In this document: piece after piece, positions 1-60,382 of the stretch | Position numbering within the stretch: position 1 is the first letter of the stretch | How the letters are laid out: each line of letters opens with the position of its first letter | DNA from: Saccostrea echinata | Taxonomy: Eukaryota | Assembly (NCBI RefSeq): GCF_033153115.1 | Contig: NW_026889761.1 | Span: forward strand, 17,794,001 to 17,858,000 | DNA length: 64,000 bases | Reading direction: 5' to 3' | Notes under the pieces: model-generated | Seen by the model: only the letters and a program-made list of their open reading frames with translations | Databases searched by the model: none | Told to the model about the DNA's origin: nothing | Position numbers and translations under genes: made by a program

Positions 1-1900
1 AAAATACCATCAATGTTGTCCAAAAACAAGACAGTATCTATTTTCAAAAATAAATATGTCTTAAATTTAGTACAAGCAGGATGCCTAAATACAAAAATTA
101 CATTCACAAATAAAAATCTCTTCCAAAAAATGTGTACCCGATTTTTCTTCATTAAATCTCTTTATAACCAATTTCTGTAAATGCCTCAAATCGTTATCCC
201 CTATTTCATCGTCTGCCGTGTGATCCATGGATAAAAATGGCAACCTCTCTCCAAATTTGGTCAATGTGTTGCGTATTAAATCGCGAAGAGTTGTCTCTTC
301 TCTGTGTATAAATCACACTAATGAATGAGCTGTACATGTACACATATAAACAATCTGAATCGCCTCGGTAATGAAATCCGCCGCTTTACCTTAAATCTAC
401 TTTAAACACATTCCATTTGTCTTCCATGTAGAGACGACGACATACCTCCACCGCCAAACTTGTTTTTCCCATCCCACCCATACCGCATATTAGAAGTCCT
501 GAAGAAAAAATTCAGATTGATATCACATACGTTTGATACTAATGTAAATCATGTACTGTATCAGTAAATCAGTACGGTACCAATTTTGATGCACCAGATG
601 CGCATTTCGACAAATTACGTCTCTTCAGTGATGCTCATGCCGAAAGGTTGGAAATCCAATATATTTAAATAAAAAAGACTTTGAAGAGCTGAAAAAAGTG
701 CCAAAGACTGGAGCCATATACGTCGAAGGATTAGAGCTATGCATGAGGGAGATAATCCTTAATTTTGAAATAAATTTTTAATTTTTATCACAGTAATTGA
801 ATTTATATCCGTATTTTTAAACTAGTACCGAAGTACTAGGCTACTGGGCTGTAGAGATGCTAGGGGACAAACAGTCCACCAGCAGAGGCCTCGACCCAGG
901 GGTCATAATGTAAATCATACACGGTACCAATTTTGATGCACCAGATGCACAAATTACGTCTCTTCAATATCAATGACTAGAATAATTTGTAGCTACACAG
1001 TTACATGCAGATTTATATATGTATTTGTAGTTTGGGTAGAACATGTATTTGCGAACTAGAATATAAAGATATACAATGGAGTCTCGTTCATCCGGACTCC
1101 AATATAAACCCGGACGCTTCACCCTCTGGACCTTGTGGGGAACAAATATATATACTATATGCATTTTTCACTCAATTTAATGTCATATTCTTTCAATTTA
1201 TCTATGTATTGGCGAAGATCGTCGGCGACTTTAGTTGAACCATCATCAACATGAAGACTAACTTCTTCGGTCAGATTGATGAGGAATTCGACTACATGAA
1301 AATGTTCCCCAAAACTATTTTCAAGGGTCTGGAAAAATTGTTCTCCATTCTAAAAATAGAAAGAATTACAAGAAATAGTTTTTGTTGTTTTACAAAACAA
1401 ATCATACAATGTGTACCTCATATTATATTTGGAAATTATCGCCTCAATTCATTTCACCAACTCAAAATCTTGAAAGACTGTTGTAGTGTGCAATGGGTAA
1501 GGCATTGCCGGTAGCAACTTATATTTATTGTGTATTCACCAACATTTTAACCACACGCACTTGAGAAATAAAAATGTAAATATATTTAATATCCTGTTAT
1601 TTTGAGCAAAGAAAATGGCATATGAAAACTACTCGGTAAATAACATGTATATGAGATATTTATGTGTATGTCTTTCATACATTCTATGTTCAATATTAAT
1701 AGTTTAGTCATATATATCCCCTACATAGTATACATGATTAAATCATATCTGACCTTGACTTCTTGTCCCAGTTTAGCAGTGGATAAGGCAAAGAATTCTC
1801 GTTCTATGTCCTTGTCTGTATTGATGACCTCAATGAGACAATTTTTAATTCCATCCCAGGACTCTAGCGGCTGGTTCAAACCCCGTCTTAGACTCTGCAT
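1..1900 (-). CDS. NLR-like paralog B (DED-like + NB-ARC), 5' part; continues off the left edge; exon 2 truncated (possible pseudogene or DED-only isoform)
   Basis: Exons read by hand. 1900-1754 MQSLRRGLNQPLESWDGIKNCLIEVINTDKDIEREFFALSTAKLGQEVK (147 nt, same length and phase as paralog A exon 1). 1349-~1155 NGEQFFQTLENSFGEHFHVVEFLINLTEEVSLHVDDGSTKVADDLRQYIDKLKEYDIKLSEKCI* (TAG 1157-1155). 498-390 LLICGMGGMGKTSLAVEVCRRL (Walker A). 301-138 EETTLRDLIRNTL...KRFNEEKS. 37-<1 TVLFLDNIDGI (Walker B). Intact junctions are GT-AG with the same phases as paralog A; the exon 2 donor is unresolved. Confidence 0.85.
541..966 (-). mobile_element. Retrozyme-like element: ~347-nt unit with terminal direct repeat carrying a hammerhead ribozyme
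   Basis: The segment aatgtaaatcat..cggtaccaattttgatgcaccagatgc..caaattacgtctcttca occurs at ~541-626 and ~907-966 (gcacca at 591 and 938). The intact HHR is in the first copy; the second copy lacks gcatttcg. Confidence 0.8.
591..634 (-). ncRNA. Minimal type I hammerhead ribozyme
   Basis: Minus strand reads GCAUCA CUGAAGA GAC-guaauuu-GUC GAAA UGCGCA UC^ UGGUGC: stem I GCAUCA/UGGUGC, full catalytic core, stem II GAC/GUC, palindromic stem III AUGCGCAU, AUC cleavage triplet (cut between 597 and 596). Confidence 0.85.
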
Positions 1901-3507: not shown

Positions 3508-4419
3508 CTAATATGCATTGTTAGGACCCATGCATTGAATATTTTCATCAAAACCTTTTTGTCTTTTTAATGTACATGTGTTATGCCTGTCCGAAGATGA
3601 CCTCTTTTTAAGAAAATTGAAATGATTCAAGACACTTTTTTCACAAGAAGAGAATACATCTTCCTCCATTGACCCTGAGGGTATGAACGACAGCCTCGGT
3701 TTCGAATCAGAATCTGTCAAAGAGGGGAAACTCGTGATGGAATCTCCCATACCACTGTCTATAGACCCGCTGTGAAGGCTGCTTTCTGGCTTTCGTGTAC
3801 TTATAACGTTCATTGTTTCATCAGAATTTGTAACGCCCACACTTTCTGTGCATCCATCAAAACTCAGTGTTCTATCATCACATCTTTTAATAACTGAGAT
3901 TTCCTCCTCGGATGTTATACTGAGAAATGAAGATTCAGAGTCGGATGATGGCGAATCAGACCCTTCATTGCTTTGATCAGTTGAAAATGAAGAAAGTTCA
4001 TTGTCTAGGTCCATACTTTGATTACGGAGGATTTTCTTGTTAAGTTTTCCAGCTTCAAAATCCTGTTTGCATAAAAAAGAACTAACATATATTGTACTGG
4101 ACATCAAACGATCAAAAGTCATAATATGTATTCAATTTGGATATCATTAGTTAATATTATTTATACCTTGTAGAAATATGGTCTTACCAGATAGAAGCCA
4201 TTCACTTGTTCAATTTCCCTCTGATCCTTATTCAGTTGTCTTAAAACTATCTTGTGATTCTTCTTTATTTGATCGTAAAGAATTTTGTTCTTCTGCCAGT
4301 TGAAAAATCCTCCTTGTTCAATCTGTCTTTGAATCTCCTTGTAGTTAGCATCAGCTCTGGCAAGGAAAGATGCTGCCTCTGTCGCTTTATACAGTAAAAA
4401 AAAATAATAGATAAGTGAA

Positions 4420-4508
<89 letters not shown>

Positions 4509-7500
4509 GTGTGTAATATAAAAAAAGTTAATATACAATACGTACAAGGCTCCCTTAATTTCAACAAGTGCGTTGCTTTCTGGACGAACAGGGAACTTAT
4601 ATCTTGGTAGGACGATATCAGATTTATATGGGGTGGATGTACATATTGTTTCCATATATTCAAACTTTCTTGTAAATCTTTTTCCGAAGCTTCGAATTTC
4701 CCTTGTAAAAGGTAAAGTTTGCCCCTCATTTTAAGAATTTTGGCTCTTTTTTCCGCTCTTGCTGTTTCCATAGAAAGAGCAGTATTATAGTAAATCTCTG
4801 CTTCTTGTAAGGCATCCTCACGTAGACGGTCTTGATCCCACTCCTTTAAGAATGCACTTCCTATGTTAGTCAGGAAAATGTCTTTATCGATGAAATCATC
4901 GTGTTCTCTTTCGACTGTTGTGAGAGCTCTTGAGTGGTATTCTCTCGCAGTTTTATATTCCTTGGATTTAAAGGCAATAACTCCCATTAAATTGTAAATA
5001 TTTGCAATCTGTGACCAACAGTCCCTTTCCTTTTTCATTGTTGTACATAATGCCATTTCAAGGTACTGTTTGGCTTCACCGTAATTTTCAAGCATGCTTA
5101 GATAACGAGCATGCATAGTCCAGAACCCACCAAGAATCAATGCAGAAGGGTAATCCTTAACCCTTCGTTTGTTTTTCACATAATTAGCTGCTTTTGAGAG
5201 TTGTTCATGTTCAATTATTGTAGAATCAATTTCGGTCAAAATTCTTTGGCAGCTCTCCATTCTTTCATTATCAAAATAAAGTTTTGCCAGACAAGTTTTA
5301 TAATAAACAAGGTCTAATACCTTGTCATCTTCTTCAGCGTTAGAAATCATATTTTTATAATATTGACATCGGCGAGTGGTGTCCAAAATCAGATCCGTTA
5401 ACCATTCAGTATTGACAACACTTAATGCACTGGGGAGATCTCTTAAATTAGGTTTAGGATTTGTATGTAAATCCATGACATATTCGTAGAAAGTGTGAAA
5501 ATGAGGTTCGTATTTGGCAATGGTCCTTAGCGATTCAGCAGAAGCCATTTTTGCCGTTTTTGAGACAGTTTTGTAGATATACTCGACATATCTTTCCCTT
5601 GCATTGTTAACAAGGACTTGATATTGTGCCTCCTTGGATTTTAAGAATTGATAAACTAGTGGATGAATATAATAGCATTTTGATGAATATGCTTTTTGTG
5701 AAGACTTTTCTTTTATAATTTGATCATTTGACTCTGATTTAAATAAAGTTCCGATGGATGATTCTAGGAAATGATATCGTTTCAAATAGACGATCTCCCA
5801 TTCCATGCTTGCCTTTCCTGAATTTGTGCTTCTACCACAAACAAACTTTGCAGCCTCGATATCAAACTTTATTGTTCGAAAAACAAACAGTTGCATAAGG
5901 GTGCACGTTATTTTATTTTGTTTACCCGATTTGTCAAGCACTGAGAAGGATTGTTGTAGACAAGACTCTATTCCAATGATATTGTTTTGAATTGCAGAGT
6001 TGGTGCACAGTGAAAAGGTTTCTGTTAGTTTACTCGGAGATATGTCCTTTAATACACTGCTAAGAGAAAGCATGGCCAATGGACAGTACGAACAGATGGA
6101 TGCCATCTTCTTTATGTCTTCCTCTTTCTGGATAAAAAGTAGAAATAACAGTCATCAGTGTATGATATTTTCAAATTAAATCTTATTTCTGTTAATAAAT
6201 TTATGGATCAATTAAATCATTACTACAATTAATTAATTATTTTTTATTCATTATTCTTTACACAGTAAGTTGTACTAACACATTGTATATTTTGCTGGGT
6301 CAACTCCTGCTTGAAAAGTGTTATCGCATGTTGCTCAGAAAGCTCTTGAAGTTTAATTTCGACGAAGACTTCTCGAAGAATCCGAGCTTTCTCGGTTGAC
6401 GGGAGACTTGGACGAGAGGTTATTAAAACCCTTGTCTAAAAGATAAAAGTTTGAAAAAAAAACCCTTTCAGAACAAATAAACTTATTATTTCATCCTATT
6501 CAGAAAAAGGAATAAAAATTATCAGAAGTAAATATATACGTTATTCTCTCTATAAAGGCATATTTAAAAGCAAATCACGTCAAGAAATATCATAAATGTA
6601 AATTATATGACTCATTACCTTCCCTTGATGCATTTCATCCTCCTCGGCTTCAATAAGCATATTTACCAATTTATTTAGAAAGCTAATAACGTCTCCCTCA
6701 TTACTCGCTAAAATGTCATCCATATTGTCTAAAAGGAACACTTTATTCTGCTCTGCAAAAAATTAAGTCTCAATTTGTTATTCATTTGGACATAGTTTTG
6801 GTTTTTCGTCATGATGTCATCTTGATTTACAATAATAAGATATACATTTCTGTGTGCTCTTGTGTGTAGCAAGAATTGCTTTCATTGTCTCAAATTTATT
6901 TAATTATTCAATTCGCATAAAAAGTAACAAATCAAGCATACTTAATATAGAGTAAATAGTAGAGAAATTGATTATTATTGTTATTTTGGGATTGTTACAA
7001 TTTACCTGAGCTTTCACAACATCTTTTAATCAAAAGATGTCTCCGTGAATCTTGATTAATATCTTCAAAATAGTCCTCCTCATCTAATTTACTTGCGGAC
7101 TCCAAGTCTCCATCTGATAATTCTTCTCTATTTGACGTCATCAACAATTCTCCAAGCAGAATGAGTGCACTTCTAACGAGATCTCGCACGTGTTTCTGTT
7201 CCCTTGTAAATAAGACTTACAATGAATCACTTTAAATTTTTATTTTAATATCCCAAACCCCTTTCAGACATAGATTTATTCAAGTCTCATAGTTTGGTAG
7301 ACAGATGAAATAAAATGGTAAGAATGTTTTTGCCTCAGAAAAAAAATGAGGATACATGGAGTTACCTCACACGATATAGTTCACTTAATTTCAAGTATAA
7401 AAGTATAAAAACTAAAAACTTAAATGTTTCATTAAAATGAACATTGACTGAAATGACACTTTCGTTTACTATAGTCAGATAGTTCTGGGTGTAAACACAA

Positions 7501-8834
7501 CGTAAAACAAATAAGTGCATTAAAATCACAAATTAAATTATTAAGGTAGGACATCTTTCTATAACTCACTCATGATAGCAATTAAACAAGTTAACAGTAT
7601 GCAATTCTTTGCGGCAACTAGTACCTTAATTCGACTTTTAGGATCCTCCAATTTGCTGTTTCTCCTGACAACCTCCTACAAACTTCGTCAGCAACACTGG
7701 TTTTCCCCATTCCACCCAATCCGCAAATCCACACACCTACAATAAACAATATTTACACACTGATTGTCGATGGATTTTTCGGTTATTTCCCGATCATGAC
7801 AAGGAGCATACGGTGGGTGAAACCGGTCGGCAGGGAATGCTCACTCCTCCAGGGCACCTAATCCCACCTCTGATGTCTTAGAGGTCCGTGTTTGCAATGC
7901 TCCTATTTTGTAATGTTAAATGGACTTTTTAGCCCGAATACTGTTCGTTACCTCCACATATTTCATTGAAGTCAGAAATAACAGATCCACATGTCACAAG
8001 TAACAAGTGAAAATAAAAAATACAAATTCCAGCATACATTGATATATACTTCACCTTTACTTTGCTGATTTTGGAGAGAATCCATGGCTTTTTGTATCTC
8101 CTCTTCTCTCCCAATGAGGTCACATTTACTCCAGATTTTCAATTGCTTCATTTTCTCGTCGTTCTTCCTGCGTTGCTCTGTGTATTCTTTTAGAATTGAG
8201 GGCAAGGAGGTTGTGCCCTCATCCAAATGCAGTTTTGTTTCTGTTGTTAAGTGGATCAAAAACTCGACGACAGCATCCCTTTTATGTTCGAAATGCCCAT
8301 CTAAAGCCTCGAAATAGCTTATACCGTCCTGTACAATATCGACAGACAAAAATTTTTAAAATGTTTTCAAAATTACTTTTTTTTTTTTTTTTTTTGAAAG
8401 TACAGATTTCTCGACTCTGACCTTGTGTATCATGTGCAACTTTTAAAATTTGTATGATAGCATTAAAGAAGAACAATTTAAATATATCGTGTACAATGAA
8501 TTTTCATATCTTCAACATGATGTTTTCAAAAAAATCAAAAAACAAAATACTCGAGGTTGTATTCCTCCATTGTACTTTCATCAACAAATAATGAGTTAAC
8601 AGAAGACTTCAAATGAAATTTTGCAACATTGTTTACAAACAAAATTCTACTGAAAACTTTTGAAATAATATTTTTAAACTTTCTTACCGTAACTTTGCCA
8701 GTCTTAGATTGTGACAGTTGAAAAAGTTCACGCCGTGTTACATTATCGGAGTCTATCACATCAATCAGGGTCAACCGGAACTTGTCCCAGGGGTCGATCT
8801 GGGTCATATTAGGTCCAACGTTCTCAGAGAACAT
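3508..8834 (-). CDS. NLR-like STAND protein A: DED-like death fold - NB-ARC - TPR - Ser-rich tail (~1117 aa, 9 exons)
   Basis: Exons 8834-8688, 8328-8055, 7736-7625, 7202-7006, 6752-6619, 6435-6280, 6127-4546, 4384-4188, 4062-3508; total 3354 nt, open frame, GT-AG. Motifs: LIGREEEI, Walker A GLGGMGKT (7722-7699), Walker B VFLLDNMDD, RVLITSR, LQELSEQHAITLF, YCPLA (GxP-like), IHPLV (MHD-like), and TPR helices such as IANIYNLMGVIAFKSKEYKTAREYHSRAL and RAKILKMRGKLYLLQGKFEASEKDLQESL. Confidence 0.9.
4423..4504. repeat. (TA)n microsatellite in intron 7 of NLR-like gene A
   Basis: About 41 TA units; explains the YIYIYI runs in the ORF track. Confidence 0.98.
7759..7966 (+). mobile_element. 3' tail fragment of a Penelope-like (Naiad-type) retroelement in NLR intron 2
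   Basis: cccgatcatgacaaggag..ggtcggcaggg..atgctcactcctcc..cacctaatcccacctctgatg..gaggtccgtgtttgc matches the tail that follows the RT relics at 16855-17030 and 54040-54200. Confidence 0.75.
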
Positions 8835-59189: not shown

Positions 59190-59351
59190 GAGGTGCTGTT
59201 GTATTCACTGGCTATAGAACTGTCGAGTAGCGGTGAAGGAGGATATAATGTTGCAGAGCATTATGAAGGAAGTTGTCATCTCATGAGAACTATCTGGTTT
59301 CTCTACCTCTGATTATTGCATCAAAATTGGTACCGTATATGATTAACATTA

Positions 59352-59393
59352 TATCACTGAAGAGATATAATTTGTCGAAATGCGCATCTGGTA
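59352..59393 (+). ncRNA. Minimal type I hammerhead ribozyme within an internally deleted retrozyme copy (59317-59425)
   Basis: UAUCA CUGAAGA GAU-auaauuu-GUC GAAA UGCGCA UC^ UGGUA. The direct repeat catcaaaattggtaccgtatatgatt.acatt occurs at 59319 and 59394. Confidence 0.8.
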
Positions 59394-60382
59394 CATCAAA
59401 ATTGGTACCGTATATGATTTACATTCATTCTTTGTCATCCTTGAAAATGGGTATTTTTTTATTTCTCTTGTTTAAAAGCCTTGCATACTGAATGTTGTGT
59501 AGGTCTTCATTTGTTTCATTTTGTATCTTTGTGTCAAATGACAGCTTTCTAAGCAAAGATTTTTGTTCAAAACCCAGTGATTTTAAAGTATATTAATTAG
59601 GGCCTTCTCTCCTAGGTTAGATTTCCTCTGCTTTTTATGTATATGGGAGTATATAGTTAGGTAATCTTGTATGTCCCTATTTGTATTTTTACCTCACATC
59701 TTTTCTGTTCTTGTAGATATCCTTTTGGGATGTAATAATATACATATTTCATCTTTGATACCTTGCTTACAAATCTGTTTGTATTTTGATACAGTTTGAA
59801 AAAAGACAAAGGAATATGACAATATCTTGTTACCAATTTCAGAGTCACTTATTGCAAATTTTATCAACTTTTTAAAGTTAATTTTTTTCAACTTTTTGAA
59901 ATTAAATTTTTTCCTAATTATAATTTCAAATTAGGTGTTGCAGCGGTATTTTCAAGCGTCCCTTTTTTCTTGATGCACAATTATTTTGAACAAGTCAGAT
60001 TTATGACAGGTTATTTTAAGCCAATGAAATACTTGTATTTCACAGAATTATAAAGGATACAGTTATACCATGTTTATATAAGATAATGAAAATGATGATA
60101 ATTGTTTCTTATATTAGTTTGTTAACTGGACCTGTATCATTTCACATATGGGTCAAAATTAAAATTGTGTGGATATAAAGCATCTCTGTTCTAGTATAAT
60201 AAGAAAGGGAATTGGTTAGTTTGAGCAGTATTTGTATATTAATACACCATTTATGTTTTGTAAATACGCCAAAGAAGTAAAAACAAAAAAGTCATATTAA
60301 AACAGAACTTTCAAATACATGTATACCTTTTAGGAAAAGAAAATATAAATGAAAATTTTTCACATTTCAGATGTATATTTAT

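What the first reader, a model, noticed from the sequence alone, without database searches (positions are those of the whole stretch)
541..966. Hammerhead-ribozyme retrozyme inside an NLR-like gene intron, in sense orientation
Seen: a complete minimal type I hammerhead (591-634, minus) whose sequence recurs 347 nt away as a broken copy. Known: 170-400-nt repeats bounded by type I HHRs are non-LTR retrozymes that yield circular RNAs and are thought to use Penelope-like RTs; minimal HHRs with a palindromic stem III (here AUGCGCAU) cleave mainly as dimers. Inference: it lies sense in paralog B pre-mRNA, between the death-fold exon and the P-loop exon, so cleavage would separate effector from NTPase coding sequence. 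Because the second core is broken, efficient cleavage might need a partner in trans.
Basis: partly seen in the sequence, partly recalled or inferred. Interest (0 to 1): 0.82.

Follow-up and report, generated by a model that had tools for sequence, protein, structure and literature searches.

The report
Decayed hammerhead retrozyme copy in NLR-like gene
This is one worn, 1.2-unit copy of a self-cleaving-ribozyme retrotransposon (a "retrozyme") present in well over a thousand copies in this animal genome; it sits on the sense strand of a transcribed NLR-like gene, but it is an ordinary passenger insertion and nothing shows it acts as a regulator.

Summary
Window 591-634 (minus) is a complete minimal type I hammerhead: Rfam Hammerhead_1 31.4 bits, E 9e-6, every core nucleotide present, predicted cut at 597/596. 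A broken copy lies 347 nt away.

The retrozyme reading also holds. Window 541-966 belongs to a 347-nt-unit family with at least 1,177 near-consensus hammerheads genome-wide and none in a reversed-pattern control. Insertions carry 1.1 to 3.7 tandem units, a fixed 3' end 35-37 nt past the ribozyme cut site, and 5' ends at variable positions. This is the insertion signature of Penelope-like elements.

A 90%-identical paralogue 47 kb away is an empty site. It shows the copy entered the intron about 43 nt upstream of the P-loop exon, in sense orientation.

The functional inference is not supported. This gene copy has also lost the end of its upstream exon and that exon's splice donor. Its frame stops at 1155-1157, and RNA contigs read straight through into the retrozyme. 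The only junction seen into the P-loop exon uses a cryptic donor inside the retrozyme, in one contig of one run. The upstream hammerhead was incomplete from insertion, so this locus cannot release a circle.

The scan's first readers noted this family 13 times elsewhere in this genome. It is a known kind and of low interest.

The parts
541..966 (-). The whole retrozyme insertion: a 23-nt 5' remnant, one full 347-nt unit and a 3' tail (about 1.2 units).
   Evidence: It matches more than 2,000 first-look candidates in the genome; scored copies are 86-92% identical. It is 91.7-93.4% identical to the family majority sequence. Removing it in silico restores collinearity with paralogue C.
591..634 (-). 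Intact minimal type I hammerhead ribozyme; predicted cut between 597 and 596.
   Evidence: RF00163, 31.4 bits, E 9.2e-6, full model length. All core nucleotides can be read directly.
597..943 (-). One complete 347-nt family unit, from cut-site equivalent to cut site.
   Evidence: blastn against the family majority sequence covers positions 1-347 at 93.4%. The MFE fold is -79.1 kcal/mol, z -1.6.
938..966 (-). Upstream hammerhead remnant. It is 5'-truncated at U4 (no C3, no helix I 5' strand) and lacks 9 nt including GAAA.
   Evidence: Sequence, repeat D6, and a 5' boundary at family position 317.
541..596 (-). 3' tail. It holds the first ~35 nt of the next unit and ends in GAUUUACAU, with a ~21-nt local duplication of the tail end (541-563 versus 564-583).
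   Evidence: The 3' end lies at family position 35-38 in 20 of 27 distinct insertions, and in all but one the element still ends with ...ATTTACAT or a near variant before unique flank. The duplication appears as D3 and as a downstream tail score of 17.
579..581 (-). Cryptic 5' splice site inside the retrozyme (exon ends at 581, GT at 580-579), 16 nt downstream of the ribozyme cut site.
   Evidence: Joint L001 1457>1540 equals window 497>580, with CT..AC ends at cut +1. It was seen in one contig of run X1 only, depth 5.3, shorter side 30 nt.
390..498 (-). P-loop exon of gene B (LLICGMGGMGKT...).
   Evidence: Joints at window 301>390 in all four runs and at 497>580. Pfam gives weak nSTAND3 and NB-ARC hits.
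1155..1349 (-). Upstream exon of gene B. Homology to paralogue C ends at about 1165, and the frame runs into TAG at 1155-1157.
   Evidence: Joint 1349>1754 in all four runs. Alignments to paralogue C are; the translation is.
967..1154 (-). Former intron sequence that mature-looking RNA contigs now read through.
   Evidence: Contig records 5, 12, 20 and 25 span window 878-1351 without a joint. The 3' part aligns to paralogue C's intron.
59317..59425 (+). A second, 109-nt fragment of the same family elsewhere in the window: a tail-like 36 nt, the last 36 nt of a unit and a 37-nt tail.
   Evidence: blastn against the family majority sequence and the sequence itself.

Best explanation
Window 541-966 (minus) is an old, 5'-truncated, 1.2-unit insertion of a high-copy non-LTR retrozyme family. 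The family is non-coding and has a 347-nt unit carrying one minimal type I hammerhead.

Family mechanism (inferred from anatomy and the literature). Tandem copies are transcribed. Hammerheads with a loop-less palindromic stem III cut best when two of them pair. Unit-length RNA is then ligated into circles. A Penelope-like reverse transcriptase copies this RNA, starting at an internal site about 35 nt downstream of the ribozyme cut site and running for a variable distance. That gives DNA copies with a fixed 3' end, a variable 5' end and partial tandems.

This copy (shown). It landed in sense orientation in the intron just upstream of the P-loop exon of an NB-ARC/TPR (NLR-like) paralogue. It has only one intact hammerhead, so it cannot release a unit-length RNA or a circle. 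At most it could cut the host transcript once.

Host gene (shown). The gene has separately lost its upstream splice donor and carries an in-frame stop before the retrozyme. The retrozyme is therefore carried along in read-through transcripts, and one of its GT dinucleotides serves occasionally as a cryptic donor. It is a passenger; no evidence makes it a regulator.
For: - Ribozyme: full-length Hammerhead_1 match with an intact core. Typical family copies score 32.1 bits.
- Family size: more than 2,000 first-look candidates; 1,177 hammerheads at up to 3 mismatches versus 0 in the control; the tail motif occurs 1,560 times, of which only 326 continue into the unit interior, so about 79% mark insertion 3' ends.
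- Insertion anatomy in 27 distinct insertions: 1.1-3.7 units; 3' end at unit position 35-38 in 20 of 27; 5' ends from position 44 to 339. Short flank matches of 6 nt or more occur in 5 of 27, against 29 of 702 mismatched flank pairs.
- Neutral decay: the hammerhead bins are 94.5-96% identical among copies, against about 95% for the whole unit.
- Penelope-like elements are abundant: at least 1,175 GIY-YIG candidates, with open frames up to 951 aa.
- Literature: metazoan retrozymes, including 350-390-bp mussel repeats with about 5,000 hammerheads and abundant circRNA (PMC7229834); 5' truncation, partial tandems and a 30-40-bp tail in Penelope-like elements (PMC8557442); internal initiation of reverse transcription that defines genomic ends (PMC11167929); retrozymes as derivatives of Penelope-like elements (bioRxiv 10.64898/2026.07.22.740005).
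- Locus: the empty site in paralogue C; minus-strand GT..AG joints in four RNA-derived runs; an exact 201-nt contig of this very copy; read-through contigs; a single cryptic-donor joint.
Against: - No autonomous Penelope-like element sharing the retrozyme's 3' end or hammerhead turned up in 30 GIY-YIG loci.
- Target-site duplications are weak and inconsistent.
- Circularity and cleavage could not be tested, because the runs are contigs.
- The hammerhead scores just below Rfam's gathering cut-off.
- The monomeric catalytic fold is thermodynamically poor: -1.6 versus -8.7 kcal/mol for the MFE alternative. Activity of this single copy is therefore doubtful either way.
- The cryptic-donor joint rests on one low-depth contig.
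Confidence: 0.85

Rival explanations
1. One reading: the sense-strand hammerhead is a working cis-regulator that cuts the NLR paralogue's pre-mRNA and uncouples the N-terminal effector part from the NTPase part, perhaps with a partner ribozyme in trans.
For: The ribozyme core is intact and lies in the sense orientation in a transcribed gene. The family's RNA is abundant in the same runs, with summed depth up to about 2,470 over the hammerhead-bearing bin, so trans partners for stem III pairing exist. The palindromic 8-nt stem III can form a duplex of -10.5 kcal/mol.
Against: The ORF is already stopped at 1155-1157, upstream of the retrozyme, and the native donor is deleted. The copy is among the more diverged in the family, at 91.7-93.4% against 94-97% for most copies. 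Hammerheads are no better conserved than the rest of the unit. More than a thousand similar copies lie all over the genome, and first readers noted several others in introns. No ends at the cut site were seen, although contigs cannot show ends.
Confidence: 0.05
2. The element is a SINE-like or satellite repeat spread by LINE machinery or by DNA-level duplication, and Penelope-like elements play no part. The hammerhead is incidental cargo.
For: No partner Penelope-like element with a matching 3' end was found in 30 loci. A fixed 3' end with 5' truncation is also the signature of LINE-type target-primed reverse transcription.
Against: Insertions have no poly(A) or A-rich 3' end; they end at ...GAUUUACAU followed directly by unique flank. 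Partial head-to-tail tandems of 1.1-3.7 units at dispersed sites are typical of Penelope-like elements and retrozymes and are not seen in SINEs (PMC8557442). The 3' end lying about 35 nt beyond the unit boundary matches the 30-40-bp tail of Penelope-like elements (PMC11167929). About 1,200 separate 3' termini argue against a pure satellite.
Confidence: 0.08
3. The hammerhead-like motif is a chance match with no ribozyme identity.
For: The score is below Rfam's gathering threshold (31.4 versus 34). MFE folding does not recover the hammerhead fold (z -0.2).
Against: E is 9e-6 locally with every invariant core position present. The 44-mer recurs 1,177 times against 0 for the reversed control. Its architecture is identical to the Rfam type I consensus, including the loop-less 4+4 stem III.
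Confidence: 0.01

Closest known systems
Metazoan non-LTR retrozymes (Cervera & de la Pena 2020, PMC7229834), especially the mussel 350-390-bp repeats
   Same: A short non-coding unit (347 nt) with one type I hammerhead per unit. Head-to-tail partial tandems. Thousands of dispersed copies. Abundant RNA. Co-occurrence with Penelope-like elements. The hammerhead lacks the usual loop-loop tertiary contacts.
   Different: The species is unknown here, so identity with the published mussel families could not be checked. Circular RNA was not demonstrated here. This particular copy has only one intact ribozyme.
Minimal type I hammerheads of newt satellite 2, schistosome Sm-alpha and axolotl retrozymes (Rfam RF00163 seed type)
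   Same: Open helix I, short helix II, and a loop-less palindromic helix III that cannot close within one molecule, which implies action as a double hammerhead.
   Different: The sequence is specific to this family. Monomer versus dimer cleavage was not measured.
Penelope-like elements and their non-autonomous derivatives (PMC8557442; PMC11167929; bioRxiv 10.64898/2026.07.22.740005)
   Same: 5' truncation, partial tandems (pLTR-like), a hammerhead near the 3' end, and a fixed 3' terminus 30-40 nt beyond the unit boundary (the tail). One mini-copy in the window carries a tail on both sides.
   Different: There is no RT/GIY-YIG ORF. No sequence homology was found to the 3' regions of 30 Penelope-like loci in this genome, whose hammerhead-like motifs are of other types.
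Conserved intronic hammerheads of amniotes
   Same: A hammerhead on the sense strand within a host gene's pre-mRNA.
   Different: Those are single-copy and deeply conserved at orthologous sites. This one is one of more than 1,000 transposon copies and shows neutral decay.

Membership tests
Hammerhead ribozyme type I (Rfam RF00163) | Invariant catalytic core: C3-U4-G5-A6-N7-G8-A9, G12-A13-A14, A15.1-U16.1, and H17 at the cut site. | tested here: met
   CUGAAGA ... GAAA ... AU|C are all present at 591-634 (-); see the alignment to the model and the sequence.
Hammerhead ribozyme type I (Rfam RF00163) | Three helices around the core, with helix I open (5' and 3' ends). | tested here: met
   Helix I has 6 bp, one of them G.U. 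Helix II has 3 bp plus a G.U. Helix III is AUGC/GCAU. This matches the model structure.
Hammerhead ribozyme type I (Rfam RF00163) | Score at or above Rfam's curated gathering threshold (34 bits). | tested here: not met
   31.4 bits for the window copy and 32.1 bits for typical family copies. Both have E about 1e-5 in short scans. It is a near miss on a curated cut-off and does not touch any catalytic feature.
Hammerhead ribozyme type I (Rfam RF00163) | Self-cleavage activity. | not testable with these tools
   This needs in vitro transcription or end mapping. The contig-based runs cannot show RNA ends.
Non-LTR (metazoan) retrozyme | A 170-400-nt non-coding unit, repeated head to tail, with one type I hammerhead per unit. 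| tested here: met
   The unit is 347 nt. Arrays hold 1.1-3.7 units, with hammerheads 343-351 nt apart. No ORF of 45 aa or more lies within 541-966.
Non-LTR (metazoan) retrozyme | Many dispersed genomic copies (a mobile element, not one array). | tested here: met
   More than 2,000 candidates spread over many contigs, 1,177 hammerheads and about 1,200 separate 3' termini.
Non-LTR (metazoan) retrozyme | Expression as unit-length linear and circular RNA. | tested here: inconclusive
   RNA-derived contigs cover the element at high summed depth, and one 201-nt contig matches this copy exactly. Neither circularity nor unit length can be seen in contigs. This locus has only one intact hammerhead.
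Non-autonomous derivative of Penelope-like elements | The insertion signature of Penelope-like elements: variable 5' truncation, partial tandems, and a fixed 3' end with a 30-40-nt tail. | tested here: met
   A tail at both ends appears in the mini-copy at 59317-59425, but no 5' tail appears in 27 other insertions.
Non-autonomous derivative of Penelope-like elements | Sequence shared with the 3' end or pLTR of an autonomous Penelope-like element in the same genome. | tested here: not met
   blastn (word size 7) of the element against 30 GIY-YIG loci gives no sense-strand match. It gives only an unrelated antisense 79% copy in L052. The sample covers 3-4 families out of at least 1,175 candidates, so this is a limited negative.
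NLR-like (NB-ARC/STAND + TPR) host gene | A P-loop NTPase of the STAND/NB-ARC type followed by TPR repeats. | tested here: met
   The P-loop exon gives weak nSTAND3 and NB-ARC hits (E 2e-3 on 35 aa). The downstream exon gives TPR_12 at 2.5e-20.
NLR-like (NB-ARC/STAND + TPR) host gene | An N-terminal death-fold domain. | tested here: inconclusive
   No Pfam hit on the exons at 1754-1945 or 1161-1349, even at E up to 10.

The most novel reading that the evidence does not exclude
The retrozyme has been drawn into the gene's processing. After gene B lost its own splice donor, a GT inside the retrozyme, 16 nt downstream of the ribozyme cut site, became the only link from the N-terminal exons to the P-loop exon. 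Hammerhead cleavage, helped by abundant trans copies pairing through the palindromic stem III, would then compete with splicing on the same short stretch. The outcome would set the ratio of an N-terminal-only (decoy-like) transcript to a full-length one.
Probability: 0.05. Interest if true: 0.6.

Novelty: new member of a known kind. Interest (0 to 1): 0.25.

Why it matters
As a single locus it matters little. It is one of more than a thousand copies of a known type of element, and the host paralogue looks damaged for reasons that have nothing to do with the ribozyme.

The family-level by-product is more useful. In this invertebrate genome the DNA copies do not end at the ribozyme cut site. They end at one fixed position 35-37 nt downstream of it, with variable 5' truncation and partial tandems. 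This is the pattern expected if a Penelope-like reverse transcriptase initiates internally on retrozyme RNA, as shown biochemically for an anole element. It gives independent, sequence-based support for the proposal that animal retrozymes ride on Penelope-like elements.

There is also a caution for annotation. Sense-strand retrozyme copies bring a usable GT donor into host transcripts, and Rfam-based genome scans miss these minimal hammerheads altogether.

Tried and rejected
- Rfam at gathering threshold on the whole window, RF00163 over the whole genome and an E-value scan of 23 kb were all blank. This is a filter and cut-off artefact: short scans find the motif.
- Aligning gene B to paralogue A within the window to find an empty site failed because the introns are too diverged. 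Paralogue C, found by a genome search, worked.
- The search for an autonomous partner element used the GIY-YIG family over the genome, 30 loci, blastn and a motif scan. Three other hammerhead-like motif types turned up, but none is homologous to the retrozyme. Rfam does not recognise one of these types.
- A 5' tail was tested in 27 insertions: no signal above flank controls.
- Target-site duplications show only a weak excess of short matches and no consistent length. No clear duplication flanks the window copy.
- RNA contigs in three runs seemed to join gene B to foreign sequence at the retrozyme's 3'-terminal motif. The foreign part maps to the flank of a 118-nt retrozyme fragment on contig C45. 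I take this as an assembly-graph chimera through the repeat and reject trans-splicing.
- MFE folding of the 44-nt motif and of the unit does not yield the hammerhead fold.
- A nearest-neighbour energy for the double hammerhead could not be computed, because it is a pseudoknot in two-strand notation. Only the stem III duplex energy was obtained.
- Death-fold assignment of the upstream exons by Pfam gave no hit.
- The supplement of PMC7229834 holds no sequence text to compare with the mussel hammerheads.
- The species could not be named with the tools; run organisms are coded.
Exons were searched singly by reference.
Full report
**1. The observation**

Read on the minus strand, window 634->591 has the layout of a type I hammerhead:
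- helix I 5' strand GCAUCA;
- core CUGAAGA;
- helix II GAC(G)/(U)GUC with a short loop;
- core GAAA;
- the palindrome AUGCGCAU;
- C at the cut position;
- helix I 3' strand UGGUGC.

A cmscan of window 400-1150 reports Rfam RF00163 Hammerhead_1 at exactly 591-634 (-). The score is 31.4 bits (gathering 34), E is 9.2e-6, and the match covers the whole model.

A second copy of the flanking and ribozyme sequence lies 347 nt upstream in RNA sense (families D1 and D6). It starts at U4 of CUGA, at window 966. It therefore never had C3 or the 5' strand of helix I. It also lacks 9 nt that include GAAA.

Rfam's blanks at gathering threshold on the window and over the genome mean nothing here. The family's best copies score 32.1 bits. 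The filters also drop the motif in longer scans: a 23-kb scan is blank, although a 511-nt scan of one of the same loci finds its two hammerheads.

**2. What it is: the family**

The 426-nt stretch hits more than 2,000 first-look candidates in the 923-Mb genome, and the scored copies are 86-92% identical. The family's 44-nt hammerhead occurs 1,177 times at up to 3 mismatches, with no hit for the reversed pattern.

From 30 fetched loci I extracted 30 distinct complete units. The modal length is 347 nt and identity to the majority sequence is about 95%. The hammerhead is no better conserved than the rest of the unit (94.5-96% against about 95%). That is what neutral decay of transposon copies predicts.

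The anatomy of insertions is informative. In 27 distinct insertions the array length is 1.1 to 3.7 units. The 5' end falls anywhere from unit position 44 to 339. The 3' end falls at unit position 35-38 in 20 of 27. In all but one of the 27 the element still ends with ...ATTTACAT, or a near variant, directly followed by unique flank.

Genome-wide, the 24-nt tail motif occurs 1,560 times, but only 326 of these continue into the interior of the unit. About four in five tail motifs are therefore insertion termini, which implies on the order of 1,200 separate insertions, many shorter than one unit. This is a rough figure, because the two patterns allowed different numbers of mismatches.

Short flank matches of 6 nt or more occur in 5 of 27 insertions, against 29 of 702 mismatched flank pairs. 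That is a weak, variable target-site duplication.

There is no poly(A) tail, no LTR, and no ORF of 45 aa or more in the element.

**3. How the family most likely works**

Established for metazoan retrozymes (PMC7229834): tandem units are transcribed, the hammerheads cut, and host ligase circularises unit-length RNA. Penelope-like elements were proposed as the mobilisers.

Established for Penelope-like elements: 5' truncation, partial tandems and a 30-40-bp tail (PMC8557442). Reverse transcription starts at internal sites of the RNA, and those sites coincide with the ends of genomic copies (PMC11167929). A 2026 preprint derives vertebrate retrozymes from the pLTRs of these elements (10.64898/2026.07.22.740005).

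Inferred here: the fixed 3' end 35-37 nt past the cut site, the variable 5' ends and the partial tandems are the same signature. A Penelope-like RT therefore probably copies retrozyme RNA, circular or multimeric, from one internal start site.

Penelope-like elements are abundant in this genome, with at least 1,175 GIY-YIG candidates and open frames up to 951 aa. However, none of the 30 loci examined shares sequence with the retrozyme, so the partner remains unidentified.

The hammerhead's helix III is a loop-less palindrome. The monomeric catalytic fold evaluates to -1.6 kcal/mol, against -8.7 for the competing MFE fold. Two stem III strands can form an 8-bp duplex of -10.5 kcal/mol. This agrees with the known behaviour of such minimal hammerheads as dimers. 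Activity was not measured.

**4. The locus**

RNA support. The four runs returned by the run search are labelled only as possible RNA. Laid on L001 (window coordinate = L001 coordinate minus 960), their contigs skip five intervals with CT..AC ends in all four runs. These read as GT..AG introns on the minus strand, so the runs are RNA-derived and the gene is transcribed and spliced on the minus strand. The exon boundaries within the window are 138-301, 390-498...-1349 and 1754-1947.

Host gene. The exon at 390-498 encodes LLICGMGGMGKT... and gives weak STAND/NB-ARC hits. A downstream exon gives strong TPR hits. The host is therefore an NB-ARC/TPR, NLR-like gene. No death-fold hit was obtained on the single upstream exons. 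I searched exons one at a time by reference and did not build or search a joined model.

Empty site. A close paralogue lies 47 kb away on the same contig (paralogue C; 90-91% identity). Once 541-966 is removed in silico, gene B aligns across the gap to C's intron. The retrozyme therefore inserted into the ancestral intron, about 43 nt upstream of the acceptor of the P-loop exon.

Lost donor. The same alignment shows that gene B lacks about 400 nt present in C. The missing stretch includes the last ~75 nt of the upstream exon, which carries a ...VGREEEL... segment also present in paralogue A, and the GTAAGT donor. B's frame runs into TAG at 1155-1157.

Transcripts. Consistent with the lost donor, contigs in all four runs run unbroken from 1346-1351 down to 878-921. 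No joint from the old exon end to the P-loop exon is reported. The only joint into the P-loop exon comes from a GT at 580-579 inside the retrozyme, 16 nt downstream of the ribozyme cut site. It was seen in one contig of one run (depth 5.3, 30 nt on the shorter side), so it is weak evidence.

Other points:
- One 201-nt contig (window 737-937) matches this copy without a mismatch, so this copy itself is in RNA.
- A contig from the run labelled organism B spans both the retrozyme's 5' junction and the deletion junction with two mismatches. Both events are therefore shared by organisms A and B.

**5. Verdict on the interpretation**

The retrozyme identity, the sense orientation, the position between an upstream exon and the P-loop exon, and the expected dimer dependence all stand.

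The proposed consequence does not stand. The coding continuity of this paralogue is already broken upstream of the ribozyme, and the interval is no longer spliced out as a simple intron.

With a single intact hammerhead the locus cannot yield a unit-length or circular RNA. The copy is more diverged than most in its family, at 91.7-93.4%. Its tail end also carries a 21-nt local duplication.

**6. Comparison and novelty**

This is a member of a known kind, the non-LTR retrozyme with a minimal type I hammerhead. It is closest in size and copy number to the mussel families of PMC7229834. The species could not be named, and the supplement holds no sequence text to compare.

The scan's first readers noted the same 347-nt family 13 times elsewhere in this genome. 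Another note on this same stretch proposed a death-fold-only or linker-less paralogue. My alignment and RNA evidence show the missing linker and donor. They favour an interrupted gene over a clean linker-less splice, though they do not prove it.

**7. Scores**

Interest is 0.25. The finding is correct but ordinary. The fixed-3'-end signature that supports mobilisation by Penelope-like elements is the only part a specialist might want to follow up.

Noticed in passing
window 59317-59425 (+): A 109-nt mini-copy of the same retrozyme family. It consists of a tail-like 36 nt, the last 36 nt of a unit (a 5'-truncated hammerhead) and a 37-nt tail. It is the only case seen with a tail on both sides, a feature described for Penelope-like element insertions.
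   Followed up: partly
G000:C12:17747001-17747877 (L065/L071), 47 kb left of the window: Paralogue C of the NLR-like gene is 90-91% identical in its exons. It keeps the exon end (...VGREEEL...) and the GTAAGT donor that gene B has lost, and it has no retrozyme in the intron, so it serves as the empty site.
   Followed up: yes
window 1043-1168 (-): About 100 nt of the former intron (containing GGAGUCCGGAUGAACGAGACUCC) matches 16 other genomic sites at 72-80%. It is probably a fragment of another small repeat, lying next to the deletion junction.
   Followed up: no
L033 (G000:C45:5323085-5326114), around 1380-1500: A 118-nt 5'-truncated retrozyme fragment. In three runs, RNA contigs join its 3' flank to gene B's upstream region. 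This is most simply an assembly-graph chimera through the shared repeat.
   Followed up: partly
L034-L063 (GIY-YIG loci across the genome): Penelope-like elements are very abundant, with at least 1,175 GIY-YIG candidates. They often sit as inverted pairs 1-4 kb apart and sometimes beside (TA)n. They carry three other hammerhead-like motif types 600-900 nt downstream of the endonuclease domain. In the one example of these motif types scanned (L045), Rfam gave no hammerhead match.
   Followed up: partly
window-wide and genome-wide Rfam scans: Minimal type I hammerheads of this family score 31-32 bits, under the gathering score of 34. cmscan's filters lose them in scans longer than about 20 kb, so standard Rfam annotation of this genome would miss more than 1,000 ribozyme motifs.
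   Followed up: yes
window 3508-8834 (-): Paralogue A of the same NB-ARC/TPR gene family has its P-loop at 7699-7722 and a 613-aa TPR-bearing ORF at 4265-6106 interrupted by a (TA)n/(AT)n-like microsatellite. It has an intron at the same phase-1 position before the P-loop exon.
   Followed up: partly
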